DNA of 64,000 nt from Selaginella moellendorffii (taxonomy: Eukaryota; Plantae; Lycopodiophyta): the NCBI RefSeq assembly GCF_000143415.4, contig NW_003314358.1, positions 258,731 to 322,730 of the forward strand. The letters run 5' to 3'. The notes beneath the pieces were generated by a model, which saw only the letters and a list, made by a program, of their open reading frames with translations, was not told the DNA's origin and ran no database searches. Positions 11,570 through 60,155 of this stretch are shown here, piece by piece. Position 1 is the stretch's first letter. Every line of letters starts with the position of its first letter. The translations under genes were made by a program, and so were the position numbers.

Positions 11570-11570
<1 letters not shown>

Positions 11571-30993: not shown

Positions 30994-32514
30994 TTATCCA
31001 TTATCCGTTTTCACAGAGGTAGCACGTCTCCTACGCGCCTCCAGTGCTCTAGCAAGCTTCTCGTCCCCGGTGGCTGCGTGGATATTTGCCAGAACGACGT
31101 ACGGCGAAGACGTCTCTGGATTGAGCTCCGAGGCCTTCTCAGCAGCCAGGATACCTCTCTCGGCATCCAGATGCGTCTCGCAGGCACTGAGCAGCGTCAT
31201 CCAGGCAACATAATCAGCGATGAAAGGCATCGACTCGATAAGTTCCTGGGCCTGGGCCAGCCGCCCCGCTCGCCCCAGTACGTGAGCCATTCCGATATAG
31301 TGATCCAGCAGCGGTGCGATGCTGTAGTCGCCAACCATGGAGGCGAAGAACGAGCAAGCGTCCTCGACCAGGCCAGCGTAAGCCGCTCCAGCCAGAACGT
31401 TGATGTACGTGATCTCGTTTGGTTCCAGGCCTTGAAGCTCCATCTCTTGGAAGAGCTCCAGCGCTTGGTCCCGGAGGCCGTTGTGAGCATAGGCGGTGAT
31501 GATGGCCGTCCAGAGGACCAAGTCCCGGCAAGAGATGCGATCAAACAGGCCCCGAGCTTCGTCCACGCAGCCGGATCTTCCATGCAAGTTGACGAGCGCA
31601 GTGACCACCATAAGATCCGATCGATGAGGGGTGTCCTGGACGATGCTATCGACGAGCTTGGCCAGGGATGGAGTCGGGGACGCCGCACAGGCATCGGCTA
31701 GAGCGATCAAAGTTACGGCGTTGGGTTGGATCCCATCCAGATCCATGAGTTGGAAGAGACGAAGAGCTTGCTTCGAATGCGAGCTCCGGCCGTAAGCTCC
31801 GATCATGGTGGTCCAGGTGACGACGTTCTTGAGCGGCATTCGATCGAACATCTCCCGGGCTTCTGACAAGCGGTCGTTTTTCACGTAGGCCAGGATCATG
31901 GTCGTCCAGGAGACGACGTTCTTGTTTGGTATCCGGACGAAGAAATCTCTCGCTTCGTCAAGATGCCCCCTCTCGGCAAATGCAGCGAGCATGGCTGTCC
32001 AGGAGACTACATTCTTATCGGGCATGGCCTCGAAAAGGTGGCGGGCTTTGGAGACTTCCCCGAGCTCTGCGTAGGCGGAGATTAACGCGTTCCAGGAGAC
32101 CTGGTTCTTCTTGGGCATTTGGTGGAAGAGTTTCTCGGCGAGAACAAGATGCCCGTTCTGGGCATATGCAGTGAGCATGGTGTTCCACGAGACAACGTTG
32201 CGCTGCGGCATTGTTTCAAAGATCTCCCGCGCTTGCTCGAGCTGGCCGTTGATGGCGTAGGCAGCGGCCATGATGTTCCAGGTGAAGATGTTGCGGTGGC
32301 GGAGGGAGTCAAACACCGCGCGAGCGTCGCCCAGGCTGCCGCATTTGCCGTACATGTCGATGGCAAGGTTGGCGAGGAACCTGTTCGTGGGCTGGCCGGA
32401 GGCGATGATCTGAGCGTGGATCCGGCGGCCCTGCGACAGATCTCGTGATTCGGCGCAGGACCGCAGCTTTTCCGCGAACCAATCTTGATCGTAGCATAGT
32501 TCCAAAGATGGCAT
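30994..32514 (-). CDS. PLS-class PPR protein with E domain, no DYW
   Basis: 506-aa intronless ORF; 'MYGKCGSLGDARAVFD'; tandem 'MPxKNVVSW' repeats; 'WMTLLSAC…AAEKASELNP…PYVVLANI'. Confidence 0.95.
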   Translation of the reverse strand: MPSLELCYDQDWFAEKLRSCAESRDLSQGRRIHAQIIASGQPTNRFLANLAIDMYGKCGSLGDARAVFDSLRHRNIFTWNIMAAAYAINGQLEQAREIFETMPQRNVVSWNTMLTAYAQNGHLVLAEKLFHQMPKKNQVSWNALISAYAELGEVSKARHLFEAMPDKNVVSWTAMLAAFAERGHLDEARDFFVRIPNKNVVSWTTMILAYVKNDRLSEAREMFDRMPLKNVVTWTTMIGAYGRSSHSKQALRLFQLMDLDGIQPNAVTLIALADACAASPTPSLAKLVDSIVQDTPHRSDLMVVTALVNLHGRSGCVDEARGLFDRISCRDLVLWTAIITAYAHNGLRDQALELFQEMELQGLEPNEITYINVLAGAAYAGLVEDACSFFASMVGDYSIAPLLDHYIGMAHVLGRAGRLAQAQELIESMPFIADYVAWMTLLSACETHLDAERGILAAEKASELNPETSSPYVVLANIHAATGDEKLARALEARRRRATSVKTDNG

Positions 32515-36805: not shown

Positions 36806-37429
36806 CTAAGTCTGAGCAGCGGAGTTTAAGATGCTGGACATGGTTCCCAGAACCATGAAAGCCAGCAAGGGACTCAAGTCGAGCGCGTTAAACACTGGCG
36901 GGATGATGTTGCGGAAGAGATTGAGGTACGGATCACACATATCCCTGATCGCCATGAAGGGCTGCTTCTCCCAAGGGATGTTTGGAAACCAGCTGAGTAG
37001 CACCCGGATCATCATCACCGCGCTGTAGAGCTCCAGCCACTTGGCCATGCCCGACGCCACCACCGTGAGTGGCGTAGAGACTGTGGACATGGACGCGAAG
37101 AAGAGAGGGCCGCCCTTGGTCGCCAAAAAGAATGGCACCGCCGCCGCGTTACTGCTGCTAATGGCGCTGCTGCTGCTGGCGTGGAGAGTGAGTGCCTTGG
37201 CGAGGCTTTGGAGCGCCAAGCTGGTGGCCTGAGCCATGGATTTGAGGAGCAGTGGCAAGAATGCGAGCGGTGTCGTTGGAGGAGCTGTGTGGAGGAGCGA
37301 TGATGCTGCCGCTGCCGCTGGAGAGAGTGCCGCTGGGATTGTGTGTGGCCGGCGCCTGTTCCATTGGAGCTGTGGAGGGACTGGGGAGGCTACCTGGATG
37401 CGGAGGGAGGATGCCGACGCCATCGCCAT
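36806..37429 (-). CDS. YLMG1: YGGT/YlmG chloroplast protein
   Basis: Ser/Ala-rich transit peptide; 'KWLELYSAVMMIRVLLSWFPNIPWEKQP…DPYLNLFRNIIPPVFNALDLSPLLAF'. Confidence 0.92.
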   Translation of the reverse strand: MAMASASSLRIQVASPVPPQLQWNRRRPHTIPAALSPAAAAASSLLHTAPPTTPLAFLPLLLKSMAQATSLALQSLAKALTLHASSSSAISSSNAAAVPFFLATKGGPLFFASMSTVSTPLTVVASGMAKWLELYSAVMMIRVLLSWFPNIPWEKQPFMAIRDMCDPYLNLFRNIIPPVFNALDLSPLLAFMVLGTMSSILNSAAQT

Positions 37430-37849
37430 TGCTTTTGACCTAATCGAATATGCTTCGAAAATGAGCAACTTAATGAAGATATTCTTAAAAAATGAATCCA
37501 CTTTTTCTATTTCTTTTAATTTCTATTTATTTTTTTTGTCAGGCAAAATAAGCAAAGATAGCTCTATTGATCCATATAGAACAAACGTCTAATTTCTTTG
37601 CAAGTCAGCCCAGCTGTATGGCTGATGCCAAGATGGGATGTCTCTTTGGATATCTTGTGCGAGGTTTATTGGGTTGTGGATGTTCTAGTCCTGATTATTT
37701 GCTTTGGGACAACTAGGTCTTCGTTTGCTCGTAAAGAAATAACCACCGATACCTATCAAATATCCTTGAGCTTTGTCCTTAAGCTGGCTTTCATCTTTTA
37801 GCATAGAAATTCAGAAATTTTAAAATCCATGGCTCCCTTTAAAACCAAA

Positions 37850-38250
37850 GGAATGGAATCACTTACAAACTTTGGGTTCTGGAAGCTCTGCCAGGCGGAG
37901 CCAGCATACTTTACCACCAAGTTGCATTAAACCACCCTGTCGACCAAACCGGACTCTCCGCTTGGTCATCTCTGTAGAGCACCAAGTTTCCCTCTGCGGT
38001 CAAGCTGAGCATACCACGGCATACAACCTGCGCGCTCTGGTCCTGGGAGAGAGTGCTTGAGACAGTGCTTGCAGGTGGGGAGAAAGCCGGCCACCGAGAG
38101 GAGGAGGAGCAGTCGAGTATCCATGTCGAGCTGAGGGGTGCTGCGTCTAGATTCTGCGTGGAGTGGAGCTGAAAAGTTTGCTGAGCAGATACTTGACCAA
38201 CGCATTTGGCTTGAGGAGCTCGCTAGCTGTCAAAGACATCAGTACTGTTG
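37850..38250 (-). pseudogene. 5' fragment of a G-type lectin RLK (inverted, deleted copy of ~46265-46950)
   Basis: 'AAPLSSTWILD', 'AGFLPTCKHC', and an upstream block CAGTACTGATGTCTT shared with ~46265. Confidence 0.85.
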
Positions 38251-38402
38251 CTAACCTTGTCGAAAAAATAGTTTAGGAACGAAACGTAAGTTCCAGTTCC
38301 TCGTAGAAACAAGCTGGCGACGTGAGACAGAGATTTAACTTTTATGTTACCTGAAGATCTCGTGAAGTTTCCTGGTTCCTAGTTACCAAGGGGAACACAA
38401 AG

Positions 38403-40041
38403 CTACAAAGGAAAGTACCTCCCCAAAGCTTGCAGAAGCCTGGCGCGGTAGTTGCGTGGATGGATGATACAGTGTTCAAGAACACGCTTCCTGATGTCCT
38501 CCTCCGTCATGACGCATCCAAGGAGCTCCCGAATCCAATCCATCACAAGACCTCGGATGATCCGAAAGTTGATTCGAATGTGTCTGTAGGCATTCCTCCG
38601 AGAAAACGTGGTAAGGTAGTCGATTACGGAAACAAATATGTGCTCCTCATCGGTCTGGAAGACTAGAACCGAATAATCAGTGAGGCCCTGTCTCTGCAAA
38701 AAAAAAAAAAAAGCAAAACAGTCGTAAATGAATCAAGCACGGATGTTTTCCAGCTTACCTGGAGGAAGTGCGTGTCCCGCTCAATCAAACAAAACAGCAT
38801 GCGGTGAGAGAAACTTGTCAGCAGCAAAGGCGTTGTGAAATAGGCATCGCTCTCTGGAACACTGTACTTGATGAACCCCTTGAGATCATGGTGTATCGTT
38901 GTGGCTTGAAGAAAGCTCCTGGGAGGATCTGTGGCCTCGATGACAAGGACGTTCAAACGTTCGCTCTCGCTGAAGGTCATCGGTGCGGGCCAGATCTATG
39001 ACACGAAAAGCAATATGAGAAGTGCTTTCGAACTTTTTCAAGTGTTTATACCTCGTAAGCGCCCAGTATTATCGCGAACGATGTCTCCAGCTGCTGGGTG
39101 TACAGGAAGTAATCTTCTGCTATTCGTCGCAGCGCACTCATATCACGGTGAGAAACCAGCTTCACGATGACTCGCTCGCTGGCAGTGGTGAAAAACTTTG
39201 CTCCACTCCTAGAGCTGCCCATCGTCCTCGGGCGTGCGGTGTTCAACGTTTCAACAAACTCCTTGTCATCCTTGAAGCCATGAACTTCCCGTAGAGTGCG
39301 AAACTGTGTGGGAAAGAGAACTGTGACGAATCCATCGATGCCCCCGAACGAGTACTCTGGCTTGTCCCCAGGAACTTGGTGCGTAAGGTACTTCGTGAGA
39401 ACGGGCAGCCACTGCGGTGGGGGAGTCTGAAAACGAAAGTTTACGTGAGCAGTGAGCAGTGAGTGAAGTTCCAAATCAAAGCAAATGTACGCTGGTAGAG
39501 TTCTCGTTCACGATATTCTTCTGAAGGCGCTTCATCGCGCGGATCTGTTTGGGGAACACAGCCGTGACGTTGCCACTGCAATCAGCATAGAAACGAATCC
39601 GCATAGGATCGGCATAAGAAATCACGGGAAAACTTGCAATCTCGATAAGTTAAATCTCGAGAATCCGCGTTAGGACCGGGATAAGAAGCAAGAAACCACT
39701 GGAAAGCTTGGAATCGGGATAAGAAGCAAGAAGTCTGTGGAGAAACAAAGTAGAAACCATGAATCGGGACGGCTCGGGGTCTAGGAAACGAGAAAGCACT
39801 AGAAAGCTTGCAATCGGGACAGGAAACACGAAATCTTTGGAGAGACAAGCGTCGAGAATGCATAATCACCATGAATCGAGAGAGAATCGGCAAGAAAGCT
39901 TGCATACCTCGCCCGAGACGATGGATCATGACAGTATCGCGTAGGCTCCCTGGCCATTGCCGCGTCGAATGCGACGCTGAGCAAGAATGGCTCAATCGCG
40001 ACGCAGACGATCGCCATCGCGCAAACCATCGCCAGCGCCAT
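38403..40041 (-). CDS. Divergent PIP-kinase (PIP5K/PIP4K core)-fold protein with N-terminal signal peptide; 5 exons, 373 aa
   Basis: Exons 40041-39908, 39575-39491, 39426-39052, 38995-38759, 38693-38403 join in frame via GT-AG introns. Motifs: 'FPTQFRTLRE', 'SRSGAKFF', 'VIVK', 'DLKG', 'DTHFLQ', 'TDYSVL', 'VIDYL', 'HPRNYRARL'. Confidence 0.8.
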
Positions 40042-40184
40042 CGCTCCGCAACCAAGGCATGCAAAATAAAACCCAAATTTCAAACGATGGATGGTACAAG
40101 TTAGCGCCAAAGCCCCAAACGTACGAAAATGGGCCAATGCTAAATTAGTGGACGTTTGTTTAGGGTTCTTCGAAAGGGAGAGGG

Positions 40185-41372
40185 ATGGATTCCAAGGCGC
40201 TACACCTTGTGCGCCATGGCCAGGCCTTCCACAACGTCCAAGGTGAAATTCTACTGCAAATGAGGAGCTCCTGGAAGATTTTCCTGGACGGGAGATGCAT
40301 CTTGAGGGCTTTTCGATGTGCTGCATCGTTTCCCCAGCGGCTCCTCTCCTCCCCAGCTGCTGTGATGCCCATTTACTACGAGCACGCCGACGCGAGCCTC
40401 ACGGCTACTGGATGGGAACAAGTAAGTCCTTTCCTTTCCCTTTGCTCCATTCATTTGGTAAATGATCGATCGCTCTCCTTCAAGGCTGAGTTTCTTCACA
40501 GGGAATTCAGGATTTCCGGATTGAGAGATCGAGTGGAGCTTGTTGTGGTGCCGCCCTTGACTCGGTAGTGTGATTTCTCCTCTCCCAGGACGCTCCAAAC
40601 TGCATCTGGGATTTTTGGAGGAGGGAATTTCACTGATACCACTGATCAACTAGCAGCTCCTCTGATGGTAGACAACGTTGGACGGTGTCCACGACCAGCC
40701 ATCTCCAGTGCAAACTCCCCTCCTTTCGTAGCACTGGAGCTTTGCAGGGAGAAATTGGTATGTTGGCTCCCATATTTTTTCTCTCTGTCAATGTAGCTAG
40801 TTGACGCGAAGTTTTGATGAACAGGGTACCATGCCATGCGATCAGTTTCCAGGGATTGACTTTTCGAACGTAAGGATCATTCGACTCGATCGAGTTGTGT
40901 GACTTGATCCAACTCTGTTTCTCTTCTCTATTAGAGCGAACAGGACCAGGACGAGCTGTGGAAGCCTGACAGAAGAGAACTAGAAGAGGAGCTCGACAAA
41001 AGGGCGAGAGCTTTTCTAGAATGGTACGTGAGCAGCCTGCGAAAGCTGTTGTAAGTTTCTGATCAAGCTTGCAGGCTATGGAGTCGTGGAGAGGAGGAGA
41101 TTGCCGTCGTCTCCCACGCAGGCTTTCTGACCAATCTTGTGACAAAGTTTGGCGATGAAGCTGTGAACAAGACAGTGTAAGCGGCGTGTTTGGATGCTAG
41201 ATTTTGCTTGGTACTTACACTTGTGCGATTTAGGTTTGCGAACTGTGAGCTTCGTAGCGTGAGATTGAGGAGTCATCGTAGTTTTGTTCTCGAGACCTTA
41301 GATCTTGGCGTTGTTTTGCTCAGGAAAATAGTCACTGGCTCGGACTATGCATTTGAGTTGACCGCAGCGTGA
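40185..41372 (+). pseudogene. Histidine phosphatase / phosphoglycerate-mutase-like gene, damaged copy
   Basis: LHLVRHGQAFHNV; relative to the 44289-45572 copy it has several deletions (e.g. after GTMPCD) and has lost a GT donor near 41270. Confidence 0.75.
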
Positions 41373-41490
41373 ATCCATCCAAAGTATGGATTCTACAAGA
41401 AAATCTTCTTTTCCTAACTTTATATTGAGAAGCTATGTTTAGCTAGGGAAAAGTTAATTTATTGCTAGGCAAAAAATAATTTAAAATAAA

Positions 41491-43588
41491 TTTAAGGGAG
41501 AGGATATACCTTATCATGTAATAGGTAGAAAATAATTAAAAAGCTTTGCATGTAACAATAATTAGTTTGTTTAATAGTAGTGTTATTCCTACCTATTAAT
41601 TGATCAAATAAAAATTTATAATTTATAAACACAAGATTAATCTTATTGCATATCAATCATTAGATGGTAGAATTAAAAAGAATATACTAGAAAGTGTTTA
41701 AGAACGTTTATAAATTTTAAATACAAAATTAATTTAAATGAATAACAACTGTTAGATAGTAAAATATCCTAAAATATTCAAGCATATTCTAGGTACATCC
41801 ATAGGCTTGCTTAAGCAAACCAAAAATATATAAATACTAGCTAGCTCTATTGGGAGATATAATATACCCAAGATAAATAAATCTTCTTTTATAACTTTAC
41901 AGTGTTAGAAATTTTGAGTGTATAAAAAGTTATATTTATCTAAAATTTTCTATTATTCATCTCTAAAGAAATGCACAATAATGCAATTAGATAATAATGC
42001 AAGTGATTAGATCATTTTTTATCATCATTAATTTTGAATTTAATGTTTTTATTGCCTTTATAAAAAAGGTGCAGAACCCTAAACACATCCATAGGATTGC
42101 TTTAAAAGCAATTAAGTTTTCATAAAACTAAAGAATTATAGACTACCAATAAACAATAGTTTAGTTCAGAGAAATTATAATTTTAATTGCATATTGAGTT
42201 AAATTTTTTTTATCTGAACTGTAATGATGGCTCTAACATTCATAGTTTACTAAATACTAATCAAATTTCCATTATATGTCTGGTTTGAAATTTAGAATCG
42301 TACATAAATAAATCTATTTAGTTTGTTACCACATTTATATTAAACTTCATAAGCTGGCAGTGGAGAATGGTTCTAGATATATTGAGAAAATACAAATTCA
42401 CAAAATCTAAAAAATGCATAATAGTTCTTTGCAACATAATAGATGGTAAGATTCTTTATACATTTTATATATATGAAGCTGAAAGTTTTATTTTATTTGA
42501 GAAAACTCTTGAATTTAAACTTTTTGGGAGGTTATCCAACCCTATACTACTCAAACTTAAAGATGTTTAACCCATGAGTATCTTTATACATTTAACCAAT
42601 TAGAAAAAAATGTGCACATTTCTCTTTATTTTTGAACTTCTATATAATCATTTTTTGAATTGTTCTTTTTTGTTGCATATAACTCACTATACATTTTTGC
42701 AAATTCATGCCCTCATAAATGAAAATTAATAACCATAACTCTCCTATAGTAAGGATTCCTACTCTGCTGGGAATCTATCTTGATTGGCAAACTTATTATT
42801 TTAAATCTGTACAAGGTTAATTTTTTCAAGAATTCTACCATCTATATTCATTGTATTATGCATTTGCTATATCATTATGATTTTATTGTTGGTGGAACTT
42901 AAGATGGTTTGGAATATTTGTCATTTGGATGTCATGCAATGAGAGATAGCAATGAGTAGTTTATTTCAAACATAAACAATTATTAGATTGTCCATACATT
43001 CTATATACTTTATAGACCAGTTTTAAGTCATTTTAAAACCATAGTGTGGAGTCAATTAAATATAAGTATGTAGCATTAAGTGTTTTTCATTTACATTTTG
43101 CTGTTAATTGTGTCAAACTTTTTGCTTATGTATAAAGGACCTAATACACCTACCTTGGCTAAGTAATACACCAATTATAGTACTATAGCATATGGACCAT
43201 CCATTCTTGTATATAAGTAGGGGTTTAAACCCTAATTAATATACCTATTTTTACATCTTGAGCACTCACAAAATAATTTTAAGGGAGAGGATATACCTTA
43301 TCATGGAATAGGTAGAAAATACTTAAATAATTTACTATGTTTTACATGTAACAACGATTGGTTTGTTTAATAGTAATGTTATTCCTACTTATTAATCTAA
43401 TTAATTAAATAAAAATTTGTAATTATAAATATGTTTGTATATTATAAACACAAGATTAATCTTATTGCATATCAACCATTAGATGGTAAAATAAAAAAGA
43501 ATATACTAGAAAGTGCTGAAGAATATTTATAAATTATAAACATGTTTATAAATTATAAATACAATATTAATCTAAATAAAAAACAACC
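41491..43588. repeat. Direct repeat pair (~41491-41748 and ~43278-43588) in an AT-rich spacer
   Basis: Both copies start TTTAAGGGAGAGGATATACCTTATCATG and share CACAAGATTAATCTTATTGCATATCAA…ATATACTAGAAAGTG. Confidence 0.9.
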
Positions 43589-43842
43589 AAAAATATATAA
43601 ATATAAATTTGAAGCTATAAGGAATATACTTTTTTTAGTTTGGTATATATTAATTTATTAGTTTTTCATATTATTATCAGTTATTAGTATATATTAATAT
43701 TAGTTTTTCATCTTTTCAGACTGAAATGGAATCAAATTGCTTTATATGGTCCAAGTACTAATCTTGTATTGATCATTTATACCTTATTATGTTTTTCTTA
43801 TAAAAACGTTTGTAAATTAGGTTTTAAAATCAATTCTTAGAG

Positions 43843-44139
43843 ATGATGGGAGACCACATTAGATGCACGATAGATCTCATGAAAAGGATTAAGAACAATT
43901 CTACAGATGAGATTGTCCTGCGTATTATAAAGATCGATTCTAAACCTAGAGATTTAGCGAGAAGATTCTGTGTAACAAATGAGAAGGAATGCTTGGAACC
44001 ATTTGGTTCTTATCATATGTCAAGTGCCATAGACTCTTGGGATGTCTGTGTAAATAGTCTTGGGAGATTTACTGATTATGGTTTTTGCACAACAAATGGA
44101 AAAGAGTATGTTGTCCCTGTTTACATTTCCATTTTATAA
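43843..44139 (+). CDS. Small Cys-containing ORF of unknown function (possibly the last exon of a secreted protein)
   Basis: 98 aa, 5 Cys, higher GC than its flanks, preceded by a TTCTTAG acceptor-like site. Confidence 0.35.
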   Translation: MMGDHIRCTIDLMKRIKNNSTDEIVLRIIKIDSKPRDLARRFCVTNEKECLEPFGSYHMSSAIDSWDVCVNSLGRFTDYGFCTTNGKEYVVPVYISIL

Positions 44140-44288
44140 CATATTTTGATAGGTCACTCATTGTTTCAGAAGCTAGAAATAGATACGTTTTAAGATTGAC
44201 TAATCGAATAATCGAATCTACTAAATTGCTTCTAGCTTGAAGTAAGAAAAAGAACTCTTTCAGAATCCATGGCTCACTTTGGATGGAT

Positions 44289-45572
44289 TCACGCTGCGGT
44301 CAACTCAAATGCATAGTCCGAGCCCGTGACTATTTTCCTGAGCAAAAAAACGCCAAGATCTAAGGTCTCGAGAACAAAACTACGATGACTCACCTCAATC
44401 TCACGCTACGAAGCTCACAGTTCGCAAACCTAAATCGCACAAGTGTAAGTATCAAGCAAATCTAGCATCCAAACACGCCGCTTACACTGTCTTGTTCACA
44501 GCTTCGTCGCCAAACTTTGTCACAAGGTTGGTCAGAAAGCCTGCGTGGGAGACGACGGCAATCTCCTCCTCTCCACGACTCCATAGCCTGCATGCTTGAT
44601 CAGAAACTTACAACAGCTTTCGCAGACTGCCCACGTACCATTCTAGAAAAGCTCTCGCCCTTTTGTCGAGCTCCTCTTCTGGTTCTCTTCTGTCAGGCTT
44701 CCACAGCTCGTCCTGGTCCTGTTCGATCTGATAGAGAAGAGAAACAGAGTTGGATCAAGTCACACAACTCGATCGAGTCGAATGATCCTTACGTTCGAAA
44801 AGTCAATCCCTGGAAACTGAATTTCGGATTTGCTCCTGGGACTCCTCTGATCGCATGGCATGGTGCCCTGTTCATCAAAACTTCGCGTCAGCTGGCTAGA
44901 TTCACAAAAAAAAGGGAGCCAACATACCAATTTCTCCCTGCAAAGCTCCAGTGCTACGAAAGGAGGGGAGTTTGCACTGGAGATGGCTGGTCGTGGACAC
45001 CGTCCAACGTTGTCTACCATCAGAGGAGCTGCTAGTTGATCAGTGGTATCAGTGAAATTCCCTCCTCCAAAAATCCCAGATGCAGTTTGGAGCGTCCTGG
45101 AAGGCAAACTTAGAAGAGTTCTCGAGAGGAGAAATCACACTACCGAGTCAAGGGCGACACCACAACAAGCTCCACTCGATCTCTCAATCCGGAAATCCTG
45201 AATTCCCTGTGAAGAAACTCAGCCTTGAAGGAGAGCGATCAATCATTTACCAAATGAATGGAGGAAAGGAAAATCGAAATGGTGACTTACTTGTTCCCAG
45301 CCAGTAGCCGTGAGGCTCGCATCGGCGTGCTCGTAGTAAATGGGCATCACAGCAGCTGGGGACGAGGAAGGACGAGGAGGCGCTGGGGAAACGATGCAGC
45401 ACAAGAGAAGCCACAGGCATCGAAAAGCCCTCAAAAAGTGCTTGAGCGTGAGGCGCCGCCATCTCCCGTCCAGGAAAATCTTCCAGGAGCTCCTCATTTG
45501 CAGTAGAATTTCACCCTGGACGTTGTGGAAGGCTTGGCCATGGCGCACAAGGTGTAGCACCTTCGAATCCAT
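44289..45572 (-). CDS. Histidine phosphatase / phosphoglycerate-mutase-like protein (At5g64460-like family)
   Basis: RHG motif; 'DASLTATGWEQ'; 'ELVVVSPLTRTLQTA'; 'ELCREKLGTMPCD'; 'EEEIAVVSHAGFL'; 'FANCELRSV'. Splice sites appear intact. Confidence 0.88.
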
Positions 45573-45714
45573 CCTTTTCTCGAAGAGCCCTAAAAAACGT
45601 CCACTATTTTAGCTCTTTCCGTAGGTCTGGGGTTTTGGCGCCAATTTTAAATTGCCAATCTAGGTTTGATATTTTGCCATTGCCCCGATTCGGGGGCGAT
45701 GGCTATGTCGATGG

Positions 45715-45800
45715 CGCGATGGGGATAAGCTTGGGATTCGATGTGGCAATGGTGAGCCGACGAGATACTGCCGTGATCATGCAAGGTATGCTAGAGAGCT
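45715..45800 (+). pseudogene. Remnant of exon 1 of the PIP-kinase-like gene
   Basis: '…GCGCGATGG…ATTCGATGTGGCAATGG…CGAGATACTGCCGTGATC…AGGTATGC' aligns with the 40041-39902 minus strand. Confidence 0.6.
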
Positions 45801-46465
45801 TTTGTTGTTCTTGCATTGATTCTATTCCGTAAGGTGAAGTGTTTTAGGGGCAATGTGACTGGGATAGTTCCCAAGGACATTAGAGCGATGAAAATCCATC
45901 ACAATATCGTGGAGGGTGTTTAGATGGATTTTCATCCTTCGGATGTCTTTGTTTAGCTTTACCAGCGGATTTACTGTAATTTGGAGCTTCGCACAAGCTT
46001 TGTCATCTGCGAGGTATGGTGAGGTACTTCTTTTGTAGATTTGTGTGCCTGTTGGTACCCACAATTTCAATAGCTTTTTACTCTCTTGAGAGACAGCTAC
46101 GTCTCTATGTCTCACTCACGCACTCTTTTTGCCTGGTGAGCTGAGGAACTTGTGGTAACTATAGTTGGAACTTACGTTTCCAATGGTTTTTGCGGGGGTC
46201 TCTAATGCGTTTGGGTGCTTGAGAACTATTTCTTTCCACAGACGAGGTAAGCATATAGATCTTACAGTACTGATGTCTTCTTTGGGACAGCTAAGGAGCT
46301 CCTCATGCCAGGCCAAGTGGTACTTGCTGCGCTCATTTACATCCAAACTATATGCCTCGGTCGTGAAGAAATATTTCATAGCGCGACTGAAGCACCGATG
46401 CTCGTCCCTTGTCCGGGGGCGCCCGAAAGAAAGAAAGTATCTGCTCAGCACGCTTTTCACGTCCC

Positions 46466-48904
46466 ATGGCGGTTTGCTCTTTCGTGATTCTCCTGATGAT
46501 TGGTGCCGTTACTCCATCGTTTACGCAGGATCAAGGCGCAGCGCCCCTCAACTCGACATGGATACTCGACGGCTCCTCGTCGCGCATTGTCCTCTCAGTG
46601 CCCGATGCAAACTTCCCAGTTTTCGCCGGCTTTCTCCCTACTTGCGACCACTGCCCCAGGCCCCGGTACTACTTCTCGGTCTTCTTCCAGGATCCGAGCT
46701 CCAACCGGAGCACGCAGGTTGTATGGCGAGCAGGCCTCCCGATTTCCGAAGGTGGTATGCTCAGCTTGACCGCAGATGGAAACTTGGTGCTATACAGAGA
46801 TGGCCAAGCGAAGAGTCCGGTGTGGTCGACAGGCACCGCCAGGAAAGGAGTCTTAGAAATGAGGCTAGACTATACCGGCAACTTGGTGCTCAACAAGGCC
46901 AACTATGATGGCACCGCCTGGCAGAGCTTCCGGAACCCGACCGACGCGCTGCTGCCGACGCAAAATCTAGAGTCAGGAACGAGCATGGTTTCTAACAGCG
47001 TCCAAGAGGCGGAGGGGTTCCAAGGCTACTTCACGCTCGAGGTGAGAGTCTCGGAAATAGTGATGACCGCCCAGGCGCCGGTGGCGCCTCAAATCTACAA
47101 ACTGTGGAGAAATCCGAGTAGCCTCGACGTGGGCGACATGTCTCTCGAGTCTGGCTGCCAGCTCAAGATCTACACCACAGACGGGCAGCCCTGCTGGTCG
47201 ACGCCATCTTTTTGTACCGACTCGACAACGCTGGAGGTGCTGAGGATACACCCCGACGGGAGTTTGCGCTATGACAACCAGCCCGAAAGAGCCTCGGTGT
47301 ATCTCAACGCGTTGCTCTTCAATGACGTAGAGGGTGTAAGCATCGGGGCTTGCGGGAAGAAGAGCGTCTTCGACGTGGAAACCAGGAAGTGTGGCTGTCC
47401 GCTGCTACAAGGCGAGAGATCATACTTCCAGCAGATTGATCCGGCCGATGCTTCCAAAGGGTGCCAGCCTTGGGAGCCGGAGGACCCGTGTGATGGACTG
47501 TATAACTCGTCAAATCACGTCATGCTCCAAGCGGCTGGCTTCTACAACTACGCGCCGCTGCGATTCATGGCAGCCAACGAGGGAGACTCGTGCGTGAGCT
47601 CCTGCTTGGAGGACTGCGCTTGCAAGGCGGCGTTTGTCTCTAGCAACTCGTCCGCGACGTGCTTCCGAGTGACCGAGTTCTACACGCTGCGCGGCAGCAG
47701 CTACAACACAACGCCCTCCTTCAAAGCGTTTCTCAAGGTTGAACAGAAGAGGCCATCCGCTCCGGAGATAATCACCAAGCCTCAAGTCAGACCTCATACC
47801 GGCGGCTGGAGCTCCAACGTCCAAGCCATCCTCATTGGCGTCTTCGTGCTGCTCTTGGCGATGGCGACGACAATGGTGACGTTCATCACTTTCTACTGGA
47901 AGAGAGCTAGCGACGCTGTGGACCAGAGCCAGGCTTTGTCGTCCGAGCTACCTCGGCCCTTCTCCCTGCACGAGCTGGAGGTGGCGACCGAGAAGTTTAG
48001 CAGGGAGATCGGGAGCGGGGGATTCGGCTCGGTCTTCGAAGGTGTTCTTGCAGACGGGAGCCGGGTGGCTGTGAAGCGCGTGAGCGACTCCAGGCAAGTC
48101 CACAAGTTGTTTGAAGCCGAGGTGGTGGCCATCATCAGCATCCACCACAAGAACTTGGTGCGGCTCCGGGGATTTTGCTGCCCGAACTTGCTCGTCTACG
48201 AGTTCGTCGCCAATGGTTCTCTCGACCGGTGGCTGTTTGATGACGACAAGTTCCTGGACTGCGATGCCAGATACTCGATCGCTCTCGACATCGCTCGGGG
48301 ACTGTCCTACCTCCACGACGGATGCCGGACGAGGGTGCTACACTTGGACATCAAGCCGCAGAACATACTCCTGGACGAGAAATTTCGAGCAAAGATCTCC
48401 GACTTTGGGCTCTCGCGGCAAGGCGAGCTTCAAGCGGTGGACGAGATGATCATCCGGGGGACTCCGGGATACATGGCTCCGGAGTGGCTCCACTTCCAGA
48501 TTAGTGACAAGCTCGACACTTACAGCTTTGGAGTGGTGGTGCTGGAGATGGTCACTGGCAAGCCTGCGTGCTCTCCTTGCGGGTCGAAGTTCCTGGCTGG
48601 AGGAGTTCTTGAGATGTCTCAAAAAAGTCCAGTAGTGGAGATCATGGACAAGAGGATGAACTTTTCTTCACAATGCTTCAAGAAGATGGAGAAGCTGCTG
48701 AGAATTGGATTGTGGTGCGTCCAGAGTGATCCCGGCCAGAGACCATCGATGGGATACGTCACGAAAATGCTGGAGGGATCCTTGGAAACGGTGGACGCTC
48801 CTCCAATCCCTCCCAAATCTCGCGCCGGGAAGGAGGAGGCAATCGACATGAGATCGTGCTCTTTGAGTGACATTGTGAGAGTTCATGTAGATCAACGGCT
48901 GTAA
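46466..48904 (+). CDS. G-type lectin S-domain receptor-like kinase 1 (B-lectin, EGF/PAN, TM, non-RD kinase)
   Basis: Signal peptide; 'DGNLVLY…VWSTGT…WQSFRNPTDALLP'; 'CLEDCACKA'; TM; GSGGFG, VAVK, HLDIKPQNILLD, DFG, GTPGYMAPE. Intronless. Confidence 0.95.
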   Translation: MAVCSFVILLMIGAVTPSFTQDQGAAPLNSTWILDGSSSRIVLSVPDANFPVFAGFLPTCDHCPRPRYYFSVFFQDPSSNRSTQVVWRAGLPISEGGMLSLTADGNLVLYRDGQAKSPVWSTGTARKGVLEMRLDYTGNLVLNKANYDGTAWQSFRNPTDALLPTQNLESGTSMVSNSVQEAEGFQGYFTLEVRVSEIVMTAQAPVAPQIYKLWRNPSSLDVGDMSLESGCQLKIYTTDGQPCWSTPSFCTDSTTLEVLRIHPDGSLRYDNQPERASVYLNALLFNDVEGVSIGACGKKSVFDVETRKCGCPLLQGERSYFQQIDPADASKGCQPWEPEDPCDGLYNSSNHVMLQAAGFYNYAPLRFMAANEGDSCVSSCLEDCACKAAFVSSNSSATCFRVTEFYTLRGSSYNTTPSFKAFLKVEQKRPSAPEIITKPQVRPHTGGWSSNVQAILIGVFVLLLAMATTMVTFITFYWKRASDAVDQSQALSSELPRPFSLHELEVATEKFSREIGSGGFGSVFEGVLADGSRVAVKRVSDSRQVHKLFEAEVVAIISIHHKNLVRLRGFCCPNLLVYEFVANGSLDRWLFDDDKFLDCDARYSIALDIARGLSYLHDGCRTRVLHLDIKPQNILLDEKFRAKISDFGLSRQGELQAVDEMIIRGTPGYMAPEWLHFQISDKLDTYSFGVVVLEMVTGKPACSPCGSKFLAGGVLEMSQKSPVVEIMDKRMNFSSQCFKKMEKLLRIGLWCVQSDPGQRPSMGYVTKMLEGSLETVDAPPIPPKSRAGKEEAIDMRSCSLSDIVRVHVDQRL

Positions 48905-49049
48905 TTCAAATGGGAAGCTCGCGCCATATTATCGACGGCTGTATGCGCTCGAGCTTGGTGCAATCCGGTAGTGGCATAATCTCGCCATTTGGATTTATGG
49001 CGCGGCAGGAAATCCATTGGGAACTGATGACAAGCGCACGGCATTTGTT

Positions 49050-50000
49050 TGACGATGGAGTCCCTCTGCAGAGTTTTTGGTGGTATGAGCGTAGTTGCCG
49101 ACGGATCTGGCCTTGGGCGGTTGGAATTCTTTTTTTTTTTCAGATGGCCGTCGGTGTGGTGGTTGTATTCCTTCGAAAAGAGCTATCAGCGGAATACTAA
49201 TGTTTGGTTGACGGAAATCGACCAACTTGTCGCATTCTTCGCAAAAACTATTTATTTTTCCTTCCATACATGATTTGCTGAAAACTAAAGCAGGTCCAAC
49301 CGTGGAAGTTGGACCAGGTTAAGAAGTTATAAATCTCTCGACGGCCAACTATCTGGGATTTGTCGGTCAGGAAACGAAAAGCGTAGGTTTTGTGTTTTTG
49401 TGTAAGACTTACCTTGCCAGTTTCTTGAATCGAATCATGTTTTTTTGCAAGCGATGGGGATTTAATCATAGCGTAAGTGGTTCATCGTGGGATTTGCTTT
49501 CTAACGTTTTCTGTAGTTCAGTGATGAGGAGGGGTCGGCACCATCAAGTATTTGATATTGGAGCTTTATGGTTTGTGTTGATAATTAAATTGGCACCTTT
49601 GCACAAGATTGTATGAGGGGCATTTTTTCCTCGTACTCACTCATTGATGAAAAGATTTTCTCAGCAGTTTTTGATTGTGCTTGCCAGTTAGTGGTTTCTC
49701 CCTGATTGAAATGATCGACATTGTAAGGACTGCAATGGGCACGTCTGTAAGAGTTTTCGATCATTAGGAACCTTTATCTCTAGCATAATGCTTCTCGCTG
49801 TCGTTACCTCCGTTCCTCGCTAGAGCAGCGCGATCGAGGAGGATCCAAGTGTGCTGCTAGGATCGTTTCACGCTGATGCTGCTTGTTTACAAACCATCGT
49901 GGATGAGGTATTATGAATAATCCGCCTTTCTCTTGGTTGATTGGAATAGGAAATCTTACTCATGTTTTCTCTCTATTGTCGATCCACGGATCAAGGTTTC
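49050..50000 (+). pseudogene. Degenerate LCB1 copy
   Basis: Collinear, heavily deleted matches to 52997-54990 (e.g. AAAAGAGCTATCAGC, AAGTTATAAATCTCTCGAC, TAGGATCGTTTCACGC). Confidence 0.85.
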
Positions 50001-50428
50001 TGAAAGCGACGGCAAAGTACTTCCCTTCATAGCTTTGTGTGCCTGTTGGTAACTTGGTTTCAAACATATCTTCACACTTTTCAGAAACACATAAAAGGTG
50101 AATATCTTTGTCTCATGTATTCTTTTGGCCTGAGCAGCTTTCTCTCTGTCTCATGTATTACTTTAGCCCGATGAACTTCATTCCCTGGAACTTCGGGTTC
50201 CTTTCTGAAACAAGTAATCTTCATGATCCAAGAACTATTTCTTCGCAAGCGTATAAATCTTCATACCGAGCCAAATGCTAGTTGGAGGTATAAATCTGCG
50301 CTCTTTGGAATCCAAATTATATGCCTCGGTTCTAAAGAAATGTTTCCATCACGCGACTGAAGCACCTATGCTTCTCCCTTGTCCGAAGGCGCTCGAAAGA
50401 AAGTATCTGCTCAGCAACTTTACAACTC

Positions 50429-52885
50429 ATGGCGGTTTGCTCTTTCATGATTCTCCTGATGATTCGTGCAGTTACTCCATCGTTTACGCAGGATCAAGGC
50501 GCAGCGCCTCTCAACTCGACATGGATACTCGACGGCTCCTGGTCGGGCATTGTCCTCTCGGTGCCCAATGCACAGTTCCCAGTTTTCGCCGGCTTTCTCC
50601 CCACTTGCGACCACTGCCCCAGGCCCCGGTACTACTTCTCGGTCTTCTTCCAGGATCCGAGCTCCAACCAGAGCGCACAGGTGGTATGGCGAGCAGGCGT
50701 GCCGGTTTCTGAAGGTGGTATGCTCAGCTTGACCGCAGATGGAAACTTGGTGCTATACAGAGATGGCCAAGAGAATAGTCTGGTGTGGTCGACAGGCACC
50801 GCCAGGAAAGGAGTCCTAGAAATGAGGCTAGAGTCATCGGGTAACTTGGTGCTCAACAAGATACACTATGCTAGCCCTGCCTGGCAGAGCTTCTGGAACC
50901 CGACCGATTCGCTGCTGCTGCAGCAAGAGCTGAAGTCAGGAATGGCCATGGTTTCTAATAGCGTCCAAGAGGCAGAGGGATTCCAAGGCTACTTCACGCT
51001 CGAGGTGGGGACTTCGGGAATAGTGATGACAGCTGAGGCGCCGGTGTCGCCTCAAATCTACAAAGTGTGGAGCAATCCGAGTAGCCTCAACGTGATCAAG
51101 ATGACTCTCGACTCTGGCTGCCAGCTGAAGATCTACATGACAGACTGGGAGCCCTTCTTGACGACGCCACCTTTTTGTATCGACTCGACAACGCTCGAGG
51201 TGCTGAGGATACACGCCGATGGGAGTTTGCGCTTCGACAACCAGCCCAAGATGGCGTCGGTGAATCTCAACGCTTTGCTCTTCAATGACGTAGAGGCTGT
51301 AAGCATTGGGGCTTGCGGGAAGAAGAGCGTCTTCGACGTGGATAACAGAAAATGTGGCTGTCCGCTGCTGCAAGGCGAGAGATCATACTTCCAGCCGGTT
51401 GATCCCGCTGATGCTTCCAAAGGGTGCCAGCCTTGGGAGCCGGAGGGCCCGTGCGACGGGCAGTATATCTCGTCCAAGCACGTCATGCTCCAAGCATCTG
51501 GCTTCTACAACTACGCGCCGCTGCGGTTCATGGCAGCCAACGAGGAAGAGTCGTGCGTGAGCTCGTGCTTGGAGGACTGTGCTTGCAAGGCAGCGTTCGT
51601 CTCCAGCAACTCGTCCGCGACGTGCTTCCGGGTGACCGAGTTCTACACGTTGCTCGGCAGCAGCTACAACACGACGCCGTCGTTCAAAGCGTTTCTCAAG
51701 GTTGAAAAGAAGAGGCCATCCGCTCCGGAGATAATCGTCAAGCCTCAAGTCAGACCCCATACTGGCGGCTGGAGCTCCAACGTCCAAGCCATCGTCATTG
51801 GCGTCTTCGTGCTGCTCTTGGCGATGGCGACGACAATGGTGACGTTCATCACTTTCTACTGGAAGAGAGCTAATGACGCTGTGGACCAGGGCCAGGCTTT
51901 GTCGTCCGAGCTACCTCGGCCCTTCTCGCTGCACGAGCTGGAGGTGGCGACCGAGAAGTTTATCAGGGAGATCGGGAGCGGGGGATTCGGGTCGGTCTTC
52001 GAAGGTGTTCTTGCAGACGGGAGCCGGGTGGCCGTGAAGCGCGTGAGCGACTCCAAGCAAGTGCACAAGCTGTTTGAAGCCGAGGTGGTGGCCATCATCA
52101 GCATCCACCACAAGAACTTGGTGCGGCTCCGGGGATTTTGCTGCCCGAACTTGCTCGTCTACGAGTTCGTCGCCAATGGTTCTCTCGACCGCTGGCTGTT
52201 TGATGACGACAAGTTCCTGGATTGCGATGCCAGATACTCGATCGCTCTTGACATCGCTCGAGGACTGTCATATCTTCACGACGGATGCCGGACGATGGTG
52301 CTACACTTGGACATCAAGCCGCAGAACATTCTCCTGGACGAGAACTTTCGAGGGAAGATCTCAGACTTTGGGCTCTCGCGGCAAGGCGAGCTTCAAGCGG
52401 TGGACGAGATGATCATCCGGGGGACTCCGGGATACATGGCTCCGGAGTGGCTCCACTTCCAGATTAGCGACAAGCTCGACACCTACAGCTTTGGAGTGGT
52501 GGTGCTGGAGATGGTCACTGGCAAGCCTGCGTGCTCTCCTTGCGGATCGAAGTTCCTGGGTGGAGGAGTTCTCGAGATGTCTCGAAACAAGCAAGTCGCG
52601 GAGATCATGGACAAGAGAATGAGCTTTTCTTCGCAGCAATGTTTCAAGAAGATGGAGAAGCTGCTGAGAATTGGATTGTGGTGCGTCCAGAGTGATCCTG
52701 GACAGAGACCATCAATGGGATACGTCACGAAAATGCTGGAGGGATCCTTGGAAACGGTGGACGCTCCTCCAATCCTTCCCAAATTTCGAGCCGGGAAGGA
52801 GGAGGCCATCGACATGACATCGTGTTCTTTAGAGTTCATGTGCATCAACGGCTGTAATTCAAATAAGGACGCGCGCGCCACATGA
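50429..52885 (+). CDS. G-type lectin S-domain receptor-like kinase 2 (recent tandem paralog of RLK1)
   Basis: 818-aa ORF with the same architecture; kinase domain nearly identical to RLK1. Confidence 0.95.
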   Translation: MAVCSFMILLMIRAVTPSFTQDQGAAPLNSTWILDGSWSGIVLSVPNAQFPVFAGFLPTCDHCPRPRYYFSVFFQDPSSNQSAQVVWRAGVPVSEGGMLSLTADGNLVLYRDGQENSLVWSTGTARKGVLEMRLESSGNLVLNKIHYASPAWQSFWNPTDSLLLQQELKSGMAMVSNSVQEAEGFQGYFTLEVGTSGIVMTAEAPVSPQIYKVWSNPSSLNVIKMTLDSGCQLKIYMTDWEPFLTTPPFCIDSTTLEVLRIHADGSLRFDNQPKMASVNLNALLFNDVEAVSIGACGKKSVFDVDNRKCGCPLLQGERSYFQPVDPADASKGCQPWEPEGPCDGQYISSKHVMLQASGFYNYAPLRFMAANEEESCVSSCLEDCACKAAFVSSNSSATCFRVTEFYTLLGSSYNTTPSFKAFLKVEKKRPSAPEIIVKPQVRPHTGGWSSNVQAIVIGVFVLLLAMATTMVTFITFYWKRANDAVDQGQALSSELPRPFSLHELEVATEKFIREIGSGGFGSVFEGVLADGSRVAVKRVSDSKQVHKLFEAEVVAIISIHHKNLVRLRGFCCPNLLVYEFVANGSLDRWLFDDDKFLDCDARYSIALDIARGLSYLHDGCRTMVLHLDIKPQNILLDENFRGKISDFGLSRQGELQAVDEMIIRGTPGYMAPEWLHFQISDKLDTYSFGVVVLEMVTGKPACSPCGSKFLGGGVLEMSRNKQVAEIMDKRMSFSSQQCFKKMEKLLRIGLWCVQSDPGQRPSMGYVTKMLEGSLETVDAPPILPKFRAGKEEAIDMTSCSLEFMCINGCNSNKDARAT

Positions 52886-52996
52886 TCGACCGCTAGGATT
52901 ATTTCTTGAGATAGACGGCTGCGATAGACGGGTGAAATTTCGTTTTTTTGAATTTTATTTGGAGACATTAGGGCTTTTGTTAGGGGTTGGGCGACG

Positions 52997-56720: not shown

Positions 56721-57098
56721 TGTACTTCCTTCCTTGCCGATGATATCTATCGAAATGGTAAGACGCCCGGAAGTCTACTCATCCTGCCAAACTTGGATAC
56801 AAAGATCCTGTCATGGGAAACTTGTCGTGTCCATCCTGTTATGGAGGGGATTGGTACACCCCTCTCCGGCTCAGCCTTGGTCATCTCATTGCCACCGCTG
56901 CTGAAACAACGATTCCTCTCCTGGCCGGGCAGCGAGAGATTTCTCCAGAGAATCCGGGGACGAACATGGAGCTGGATCCGCGTTCTTGATGAGGAGACGA
57001 GGCGATTTGCCTCGCGTAGTCCTCCCACGTTTGCGATGCTGCCGTGGTACTTCTTTGGGTGGGAAGCGCCGCTTGGAACTTCTCTTGTGCTCACACTA

Positions 57099-60122: not shown

Positions 60123-60155
60123 CACCCATCTCAAAGAAAGAATCCTAACCGTCGA

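What the first reader, a model, noticed from the sequence alone, without database searches (positions are those of the whole stretch)
38403..40041. Apparently secreted/luminal, minimal phosphoinositide-kinase-fold enzyme
Seen: five exons splice in frame into a 373-aa protein that the ORF track shows only in fragments. It starts with a hydrophobic leader (MALAMVCAMAIVCVAIEPFLLSVAFDAAMA|REP) and has two N-glycosylation sequons (NVT, NST). It then carries all PIPK core motifs: G-loop SRSGAKF, the ATP-binding Lys in VIVK, DLKG, the catalytic DYS, and IDYL. There is almost no insert between DYS and IDYL. The activation loop is long and atypical (TFSRRNAYRH…VLEHCIIHP) and lacks the usual KKLEH-type sequence. 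A segment 'VTAVFPKQIRAMKRL' echoes 'VTVLFPTQFRTLREV', suggesting an internal duplication. Established: plant PIP5K/FAB1 enzymes are cytosolic and mostly carry MORN or FYVE/TCP1 modules, and the activation loop sets substrate specificity. Inference: this could be a new secretory-pathway or membrane-anchored PIPK-like family acting on a non-canonical substrate, embedded in an immune-receptor cluster.
Basis: partly seen in the sequence, partly recalled or inferred. Interest (0 to 1): 0.85.

Follow-up and report, generated by a model that had tools for sequence, protein, structure and literature searches.

The report
Stand-alone FAB1-like lipid kinase, hydrophobic start
This is a real, intact Selaginella gene for a small lipid kinase of the FAB1/PIKfyve type that has lost every regulatory domain and gained a greasy N-terminus; whether that N-terminus sends it into the secretory pathway is untested and is the less likely reading.

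Summary
Five GT-AG exons on the minus strand (40041..38403) give a 373-aa protein with intact PIPK catalytic motifs. The window is Selaginella moellendorffii scaffold GL377662.1. The gene is already annotated as SELMODRAFT_428003, an uncharacterised 'PIPK domain-containing protein'; no paper found names it.

The kinase core is closest to PIKfyve/FAB1 (type III): 55.7 bits, against 32 for PIP4K2A and 22 for PIP5K1A, and N-lobe fold Z 14.1. The short DYS-to-IDY spacing is a type III trait. FYVE, CCT and CCR domains are absent.

Three more copies lie on the other haplotype scaffold. One has an anciently diverged 3' half (dS 0.4-1.25, dN/dS 0.17-0.28), so the kinase is under purifying selection. 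The stop after RYFPL is conserved, and similarity ends there.

The leader is hydrophobic enough to be a membrane segment. Its first codons lie in a short tandem repeat, and two leaderless in-frame starts exist. The two sequons are about what chance gives.

Best reading: a lineage-specific, probably active, membrane-associated kinase facing the cytosol. I put luminal or secreted at about 0.12. The scan flagged a paralogue elsewhere in this genome (s1-402870).

The parts
39908..40041 (-). Exon 1 (134 nt, ATG at 40041): hydrophobic leader, residues 1-30, then REPTRYCHDPSSRA. A second in-frame ATG (M29) lies at 39957..39955 in a strong context.
   Evidence: The same exon is used in all four public models.
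40002..40044 (.). Short tandem repeat (period 6 and 18) that encodes the first ~13 leader codons.
   Evidence: period 18, 2.1 copies, 84% matches; period 6, 5.8 copies.
40058..40060 (-). Upstream out-of-frame ATG in a weak context. It would open a 21-codon uORF overlapping M1.
   Evidence: Read; lies within an ORF listed (39992..40099, minus).
39602..39604 (-). ATG inside intron 1, in frame with exon 2 through the acceptor. It is a possible leaderless start (MRIRFYADC-SGNVT...).
   Evidence: Identical in both paralogue loci.
39491..39575 (-). Exon 2 (85 nt): linker carrying both sequons and the duplicated GNVTAVFPKQIRAMKRL motif.
   Evidence: The donor AGC|GTACAT is the only usable one here, because the window has TTGCTT where the other haplotype has TTGGTT.
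39052..39426 (-). Exon 3 (375 nt): start of the PIPK core. Contains FPTQFRTLRE, the G-loop SRSGAKF and the ATP-binding Lys in VIVK (N-lobe).
38759..38995 (-). Exon 4 (237 nt): rest of the N-lobe and start of the C-lobe, with HHDLKGF.
   Evidence: dN/dS 0.28 against the paralogue.
38403..38693 (-). Exon 5 (291 nt including TAG): catalytic TDYSVLV, Mg-binding VIDYL, long basic activation loop, C-terminal helix and RYFPL stop.
   Evidence: dN/dS 0.17; stop conserved; similarity ends at the stop.
40185..41435 (+). Head-to-head neighbour: a histidine-phosphatase-family (His_Phos_1) gene. Its ATG is 144 nt from the kinase ATG, and it is co-duplicated with the kinase in every copy.
45690..45920 (+). 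Decayed remnant of exons 1-2 of a second, inverted copy, with a stop and a frameshift in exon 1. It sits beside a second His_Phos copy (44256-45641, minus).

Best explanation
A Selaginella-specific, stand-alone type III (FAB1/PIKfyve-like) phosphoinositide phosphate kinase. The gene keeps only the catalytic domain, residues ~106-373. In front of it sit a ~75-residue flexible linker, which includes a duplicated copy of the first core motif, and a 25-30-residue hydrophobic N-terminus.

It most likely works as an active lipid kinase at the cytosolic face of a membrane. It would be held there by the N-terminal hydrophobic segment acting as an uncleaved anchor, if translation starts at M1, and by the cationic amphipathic activation-loop helix. 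It lacks the FYVE, CCT and CCR modules that target and restrain FAB1. It would therefore be outside Vac14/Fig4 control, and its altered activation loop may change substrate choice.

Shown: gene structure, fold, type III affinity, intact catalytic residues and purifying selection.

Inferred: catalytic activity, membrane anchoring, cytosolic orientation and substrate.
For: - Gene model.
- Identity with SELMODRAFT_428003.
- Pfam PF01504 at 49.9 bits (cut-off 27) on the near-identical allele from the other haplotype.
- Solved structures: PIKfyve 7k2v_P E 4.3e-14 and 55.7 bits, PIP4K2A 32.1 bits, PIP5K1A 22.4 bits. The DYS...IDY segment is colinear with PIKfyve with one gap.
- Modelled N-lobe against PIKfyve: Z 14.1, rmsd 2.4 A, 110 residues. 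All listed matches are PIPKs.
- The catalytic Lys and both Asp are kept in both paralogue types.
- Paralogue comparison: E4 dS 0.41 with dN/dS 0.28; E5 dS 1.25 with dN/dS 0.17.
- The stop codon is conserved and similarity ends there.
- Leader hydropathy is 2.46-2.74, and no charged residue precedes it.
- Activation-loop segment 310-327 has helical moment 0.75, against a protein mean of 0.27 (sd 0.14), with net charge +5.
- In Fab1 the CCT domain binds Vac14 and the CCR domain inhibits the kinase (PMC5385934).
Against: - No transcript evidence.
- Run shares of 0.34-0.52 of the sampled words only hint at spliced RNA.
- No old paralogue comparison exists for exons 1-2, because gene conversion made them identical in all copies.
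- The charge balance around the hydrophobic segment is near zero, so a luminal orientation is not excluded.
- DLKGS is DLKGF here, and by eye the activation loop has RR where FAB1 has KK. Activity and substrate are therefore unproven.
- The C-lobe was not modelled with confidence (pLDDT below 50).
- Pfam covers only profile positions 12-165 of 288.
Confidence: 0.55

Rival explanations
1. Leaderless cytosolic kinase. Transcription or translation starts downstream of M1, at M29 (39957) or at the in-frame ATG in intron 1 (39604). On this reading the hydrophobic 'leader' is just the translation of a GC-rich tandem repeat in the 5' UTR or promoter.
For: - The first ~13 codons lie in a period-6/18 repeat.
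- The ATGs of this gene and the divergent His_Phos gene are only 144 nt apart, so the 5' UTR must be very short.
- M29 has a purine at -3 and G at +4.
- The intron-1 ATG is in frame.
- The E17/A17 polymorphism falls in the middle of the hydrophobic run.
- The decayed second copy has a much shorter repeat region.
Against: - M1 also has a strong context (G at -3, G at +4) and comes first.
- The repeat region has no indel between haplotypes or copies, while flanking non-coding DNA has several.
- The intron-1 splice sites survive even in the decayed remnant, so exon 1 is an old exon.
- All four public models use M1, but they come from one pipeline.
Confidence: 0.25
2. One reading: a cleaved signal peptide or type II anchor puts the kinase domain in the ER/Golgi lumen or the apoplast, acting on a non-canonical substrate.
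For: - The N-terminal segment is as hydrophobic as a membrane span and starts at residue 2.
- A small-residue A-M-A site precedes R31, and V-C-V-A precedes I16.
- A flexible ~75-residue 'stem' precedes the catalytic domain, with pLDDT below 30. From my own knowledge this resembles Golgi type II enzymes.
- Four Cys outside the leader are kept in both paralogue types.
Against: - Sequons are at the chance level and both lie outside the kinase core.
- There is no positive charge on the N-terminal side of the hydrophobic run.
- In the A17 allele the run is 24 residues, longer than the 7-15-residue core typical of cleaved signals (typical length from my own knowledge).
- The strongest amphipathic helices are cationic. 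That fits the acidic cytosolic face of membranes.
- From my own knowledge, every characterised PIPK works on the cytosolic face with cytosolic ATP.
- No homologue outside this species could be found to test leader conservation.
Confidence: 0.12
3. Non-functional relic: a young chimeric gene copy that is not expressed or is catalytically dead.
For: - The family was seen only in S. moellendorffii.
- One copy in this window is already a decayed remnant.
- Copy number differs between haplotypes.
- No RNA evidence was obtained.
- Only about half of the Pfam profile is matched.
Against: - dN/dS is 0.17-0.28 over dS of 0.4-1.25 in exons 4-5.
- All four copies have intact ORFs and splice sites.
- The catalytic residues are kept.
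- The stop codon is conserved exactly where similarity ends.
Confidence: 0.08

Closest known systems
FAB1/PIKfyve (type III PIPK, PI3P 5-kinase) kinase domain
   Same: It is the best sequence match (55.7 bits, E 4.3e-14) and the best N-lobe structural match (Z 14.1). The G-loop, the catalytic Lys and both Asp are kept. The catalytic DYS and Mg-binding IDY are separated by a short spacer and are colinear with PIKfyve.
   Different: - Size is 373 aa, against about 1600 aa (rice OsPIPK-FAB) to 2300 aa (yeast Fab1).
- It has no FYVE, CCT/TCP1 or CCR domain: there is no Pfam hit in residues 1-105, and the architecture is from PMC5385934.
- It has a hydrophobic N-terminus.
- By eye, the activation loop is about 20 residues longer, with RR in place of KK.
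- DLKGS is DLKGF.
Plant FAB1C/FAB1D and rice OsPIPK-FAB
   Same: These are plant type III PIPKs that have already lost the FYVE domain (PMC11534909). They show that domain loss occurs in this lineage.
   Different: They keep the Cpn60_TCP1 domain and are large (OsPIPK-FAB is 1610 aa) and cytoplasmic. The Selaginella protein keeps only the kinase domain.
PIP4K (type II PIPK)
   Same: It is a stand-alone kinase-domain protein of about 400 aa. The G-loop RSGA(K/R)F is of the same style.
   Different: The score is lower (32 bits). PIP4K has a long insert between DYS and IID. From my own knowledge it also has an N-terminal dimerisation region, which was not found here.
Secretory-pathway kinases (FAM20C, Four-jointed, VLK); comparison from my own knowledge
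   Same: The layout is the same if the leader is a type II anchor: N-terminal hydrophobic segment, flexible stem, catalytic domain.
   Different: They have a different fold (protein-kinase-like), are from animals and have shown luminal activity.

Membership tests
PIPK superfamily (Pfam PF01504) | Profile match above the curated cut-off | tested here: met
   49.9 bits against a cut-off of 27 on P0008:1-372, the allele from the other haplotype, which differs by 3 substitutions and a 3-residue junction. Exon 3 of the window alone scores 26.2 bits. The precomputed PF01504 flag is set on all copies.
PIPK superfamily (Pfam PF01504) | G-loop and ATP-binding Lys (GxSGxxF ... IIK) | tested here: met
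   SRSGAKF...VIVK aligns to ARSGARF...IIK of PIP4K2A and to KSGAAF...ILK of PIKfyve.
PIPK superfamily (Pfam PF01504) | Catalytic Asp in (M/I)DYSLL and Mg-binding Asp in IID | tested here: met
   TDYSVLV and VIDYL align to IDYSLLV and IIDYI of PIKfyve. Both are kept in the diverged paralogue.
PIPK superfamily (Pfam PF01504) | DLKGS motif | tested here: inconclusive
   D-L-K-G is present but Ser is Phe (HHDLKGF) in both paralogue types. HMMER placed it three residues off.
PIPK superfamily (Pfam PF01504) | PIPK fold | tested here: met
   Met for the N-lobe only: Z 14.1 to 7k2v_P, and 11-13 to the PIP4K and PIP5K entries listed. The C-lobe model is unreliable, with pLDDT below 50.
Type III PIPK (FAB1/PIKfyve) orthologue | Kinase domain closer to type III than to types I and II | tested here: met
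   55.7 against 32.1 against 22.4 bits. No tree was built, because labelled plant FAB1 sequences could not be fetched.
Type III PIPK (FAB1/PIKfyve) orthologue | CCT/TCP1 and CCR domains upstream of the kinase (PMC5385934) | tested here: not met
   The protein is 373 aa, and residues 1-105 have no Pfam family. Exons 1 and 2 have no significant hits.
Type III PIPK (FAB1/PIKfyve) orthologue | FYVE domain (absent also in plant FAB1C/D) | tested here: not met
   No FYVE hit.
Type III PIPK (FAB1/PIKfyve) orthologue | PI3P 5-kinase activity | not testable with these tools
   Needs an enzyme assay.
Secreted or luminal enzyme | Cleavable signal peptide or type II anchor that is actually translated | tested here: inconclusive
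   The hydrophobic segment is present. No signal-peptide predictor or transcript data were available. Leaderless starts exist.
Secreted or luminal enzyme | Leader conserved in homologues of other species | tested here: inconclusive
   No homologue outside S. moellendorffii was found. The copies within the species are identical through gene conversion.

The most novel reading that the evidence does not exclude
The leader is used and puts a catalytically active PIPK-fold kinase inside the secretory pathway or the apoplast. That would be the first luminal member of this fold, acting on a luminal inositol lipid or sugar-phosphate substrate. It might work together with the co-duplicated, head-to-head histidine-phosphatase-family gene.
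Probability: 0.1. Interest if true: 0.85.

Novelty: new variant of a known kind. Interest (0 to 1): 0.4.

Why it matters
FAB1/PIKfyve kinases are large enzymes that depend on a scaffold, and their own CCR domain restrains the kinase. A naturally occurring protein with only the catalytic domain, kept under purifying selection and given a hydrophobic N-terminus, would show how a type III PIPK core can be re-targeted and freed from Vac14/Fig4 control. It could also serve as a small, tractable model of this kinase core. The atypical activation loop, which is the specificity element in PIPKs, makes a changed substrate plausible. If the kinase domain turned out to be luminal, it would be a new place for this fold to work. 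The finding also corrects the 3' ends of four public gene models.

Tried and rejected
**RNA evidence**
I therefore obtained no transcript, splice or start-site evidence.
Exon 5 was searched from 38675 downward.
- Public database proteins P0008 and P0001, from other loci, include the six residues encoded at the homologous spot. I used them by id.
- Local scripts on the closed machine read the whole window for alignments.

**Joined protein**
This ruled out an exact look-up for transcript-derived copies.

**Searches that added little**
- The search for homologous proteins with full-length P0001 found only the Selaginella copies.
- A 7-row profile found nothing more.
- Residues 1-120 found nothing. 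These searches are limited by length and by shared words, so the blanks are weak evidence.
- The exon 3 representative search gave one close cluster, a few distant PIPK fragments, and one spurious bacterial repeat protein, P0002.
- P0004, the nearest outside hit, is an exon of a metagenomic eukaryotic PIPK.

**Structure models**
- AlphaFold2 with shallow alignments gave poor models (pLDDT 45 and 52). I used only the N-lobe.

**C-terminus**
- Exon 5 and the last 33 residues find no PIPK among solved structures.
- My recollection that the C-terminal helix and the YF-L ending resemble FAB1 therefore remains an untested lead.

**Literature**
- No paper names the gene or the family.
- The Selaginella expression-atlas supplements held as text do not list it.

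**Rejected ideas**
- The sequons as evidence of secretion: they are at the chance level.
- A functional link to the lectin-kinase cluster: adjacency only.

Full report
**What is there.** I read the minus strand of 38300-40200 directly. It shows five exons:
- E1 40041..39908
- E2 39575..39491
- E3 39426..39052
- E4 38995..38759
- E5 38693..38403

All are joined by GT..AG introns of 332, 64, 56 and 65 nt. They sum to 1122 nt, which is 373 codons plus TAG.

**Whose gene it is.**
- A search of 1.84 billion representative proteins with exon 3 gave one close hit, P0001. This is SELMODRAFT_404223 of Selaginella moellendorffii, named 'PIPK domain-containing protein' by UniProt.
- The 90% cluster of its relative P0008 (404219) also holds P0009 (404224) and P0010 (428003).
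- Its locus on scaffold GL377662.1 is 100% identical to window 27685-50041.
- The gene is therefore already in public databases, but only as an automatic, uncharacterised entry. Four literature searches by gene names and by family terms found no paper on it.
- The scan's own notes list a first-reader finding on another piece of this genome: 'Stand-alone FAB1/PIKfyve-like kinase domain behind a signal-peptide-like N-terminus' (s1-402870). It is presumably one of the copies on the other haplotype. It is a lead, not independent evidence.

**The ends of the model.**
- The four public models share exons 1-5 but have four different 3' continuations, giving 380, 412, 426 and 525 aa.
- In the anciently diverged paralogue (L002) the frame still reads ...RYFPL followed by TAG at the same position. 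Alignable similarity stops at that stop codon.
- At the exon 2 donor, the other haplotype has TTGGTT and its models add 'VHL'.

**What kind of protein.**
- Pfam PF01504 (PIP5K) scores 49.9 bits against a cut-off of 27 on the allele from the other haplotype, but covers only profile positions 12-165 of 288. Exon 3 of the window alone scores 26.2 bits.
- Against all solved structures, the best match is the PIKfyve kinase domain 7k2v_P (E 4.3e-14, 55.7 bits, residues 114-312). It is well ahead of PIP4K2A (32.1 bits) and PIP5K1A (22.4 bits).
- The alignment pairs SRSGAKF/VIVK with the G-loop and the ATP-binding lysine. It pairs TDYSVLVFQTDEEHIFVSVIDYL with IDYSLLVGRDDTSNELVVGIIDYI with a single gap.
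- AlphaFold2 models from a 7-row alignment were poor overall (pLDDT 45 and 52). The N-lobe was usable (pLDDT 66-89) and superposes best on PIKfyve (Z 14.1, rmsd 2.4 A, 110 residues). The other listed matches are all PIP4K or PIP5K structures (Z 11.2-12.7).
- The ESM Atlas feature search also lands in PF01504 clusters.
- Residues 1-105 match no family.
- The protein is therefore a type III-like PIPK catalytic domain. It lacks the FYVE, CCT and CCR modules that define FAB1/PIKfyve (architecture from PMC5385934). Plant FAB1C/D lack only the FYVE domain (PMC11534909).

**Is it a working gene?**
- The other haplotype scaffold carries three copies, each head-to-head with a His_Phos_1 gene.
- Copy 404223 is identical to 404219 from upstream through most of exon 3. 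It then diverges sharply: 11 of 53 aligned intron-3 positions, 16% of exon 4 and 27% of exon 5. This is the signature of a recent gene-conversion tract laid over an old duplication.
- Across the old part, dS is 0.41 (E4) and 1.25 (E5), with dN/dS 0.28 and 0.17. This is purifying selection.
- The catalytic Lys, both Asp, DLKG and four cysteines are kept in both types.
- This argues against a relic. It says nothing about exons 1-2, for which no old comparison survives.
- The only old relative of exons 1-2 is a remnant at window 45690-45920, beside a second, inverted His_Phos copy (44256-45641).
  - Its exon 1 has a stop and a frameshift, and a much shorter repeat region.
  - Its exon 2 is 64% identical at the protein level.
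  - Both intron-1 splice sites are recognisable.
  - Exon 1, intron 1 and exon 2 are therefore old as a structure, but the leader coding sequence cannot be shown to be old.

**The leader.**
- If translated from M1, residues 2-25 are as hydrophobic as a membrane span. The best 19-residue Kyte-Doolittle window is 2.46 in the window allele (E17) and 2.74 in the A17 allele, against 1.23 for the next-best segment.
- Such a segment would very likely engage the ER targeting machinery (inference). Three things weaken the step from there to 'secreted':
  1. The first ~13 codons lie in a short tandem repeat of period 6 and 18. The hydrophobic peptide may be a by-product of a GC-rich repeat.
  2. Two leaderless in-frame starts exist: M29 at 39957 in a strong context, and an ATG in intron 1 at 39604 that reads through the acceptor into exon 2. 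The ATGs of this gene and the divergent His_Phos gene are only 144 nt apart, so the position of the transcription start matters. An out-of-frame upstream ATG lies at 40060.
  3. Orientation is open. No charged residue precedes the hydrophobic run. Net charge just after it is about zero and becomes positive further on. The run is 24 residues in the A17 allele, which from my own knowledge is longer than the 7-15-residue core typical of cleaved signals.
- The two sequons are close to the 1.2 expected from composition and lie in the linker, not in the enzyme.

**Features that speak to mechanism.**
- The exon 2 motif GNVTAVFPKQIRAMKRL repeats the first core motif GFVTVLFPTQFRTLREV. The Smith-Waterman score is 40, reached by 2 of 5000 shuffles. 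The N-terminal region thus arose partly by internal duplication.
- The activation-loop insert (residues 310-327, RNAYRHIRINFRIIRGLV) has the highest helical hydrophobic moment in the protein: 0.75, against a mean of 0.27 (sd 0.14), with net charge +5. The exon 2 motif is second, at 0.65 and +5.
- Cationic amphipathic helices bind acidic membrane faces, which in cells are cytosolic (from my own knowledge).
- In Fab1 the CCR domain restrains the kinase and the CCT domain binds Vac14. A kinase-only protein would escape both.

**Best reading and rivals.**

| Reading | Weight |
|---|---|
| Lineage-specific, probably active, type III-like PIPK on the cytosolic face of a membrane, anchored by its N-terminus and/or its basic amphipathic loop | 0.55 |
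| Same enzyme without the leader, soluble or peripheral | 0.25 |
| Unexpressed or dead relic | 0.08 |

**Context.**
- Four intronless G-type lectin receptor kinases lie at 46409-63861.
- The kinase's immediate neighbours are His_Phos_1, YggT, LOB, PPR, Arf and TIP41 genes.
- The 'immune cluster' is a neighbour, not a setting with shown meaning.
- The constant feature is the head-to-head His_Phos_1 partner, which was duplicated together with the kinase in every copy.

**Limits.**
- I obtained no RNA evidence.
- The look-up of sequencing runs only shows that several small contig sets of this species hold 0.34-0.52 of the sampled words. That is near the exonic share of the stretch and suggests spliced RNA, but does not prove it.
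- No signal-peptide predictor was available.
- No tree with labelled plant FAB1 and PIP5K sequences could be built, because the length-limited searches were exhausted.

Noticed in passing
window 40185-41435 (+) and 44256-45641 (-): A His_Phos_1 (histidine phosphatase / PGAM-like) gene sits head-to-head with the kinase, ATG to ATG 144 nt apart. It is duplicated with the kinase in every copy on both haplotype scaffolds. A kinase and phosphatase-fold pair on one bidirectional promoter might be a functional unit.
   Followed up: partly
window 45690-45920 (+): Decayed remnant of kinase exons 1-2, with a stop and frameshift in exon 1 but splice sites still visible. It forms an inverted duplication with the intact gene. 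The rest of that copy is missing in this haplotype.
   Followed up: partly
L001 / L002 (GL377567.1), homologous to window 38403-40300: Paralogues 404219 and 404223 are identical from upstream to mid exon 3, then 16-27% diverged. This indicates a gene-conversion tract with its boundary in exon 3 / intron 3.
   Followed up: yes
window 37685-38402 (-): The public models of all four copies skip the conserved TAG at 38403-38405 and add four different 3' extensions built from short intergenic ORFs. These are likely annotation errors.
   Followed up: yes
window 46409-48904, 50429-52885, 57399-60122, 61303-63861 (+): Tandem array of four intronless G-type (B_lectin) receptor-like kinases.
   Followed up: partly
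window 10001-12000 and 42001-44000: Two AT-rich blocks (GC about 0.25) in an otherwise 0.45-0.55 GC window. The second separates the two arms of the inverted duplication. I did not examine either.
   Followed up: no
window 39576-39907 (-), intron 1: Intron 1 is 332 nt, while the other introns are 56-65 nt and the equivalent intron in the remnant copy is about 60 nt. By eye it contains repeated 'cccgattc...aagctttc' units.
   Followed up: no
window 22641-24620 (+), 30994-32514 (-), 36806-37501 (-): Two PPR genes (one with an E motif) and a YggT-family gene. These are ordinary land-plant neighbours.
   Followed up: no
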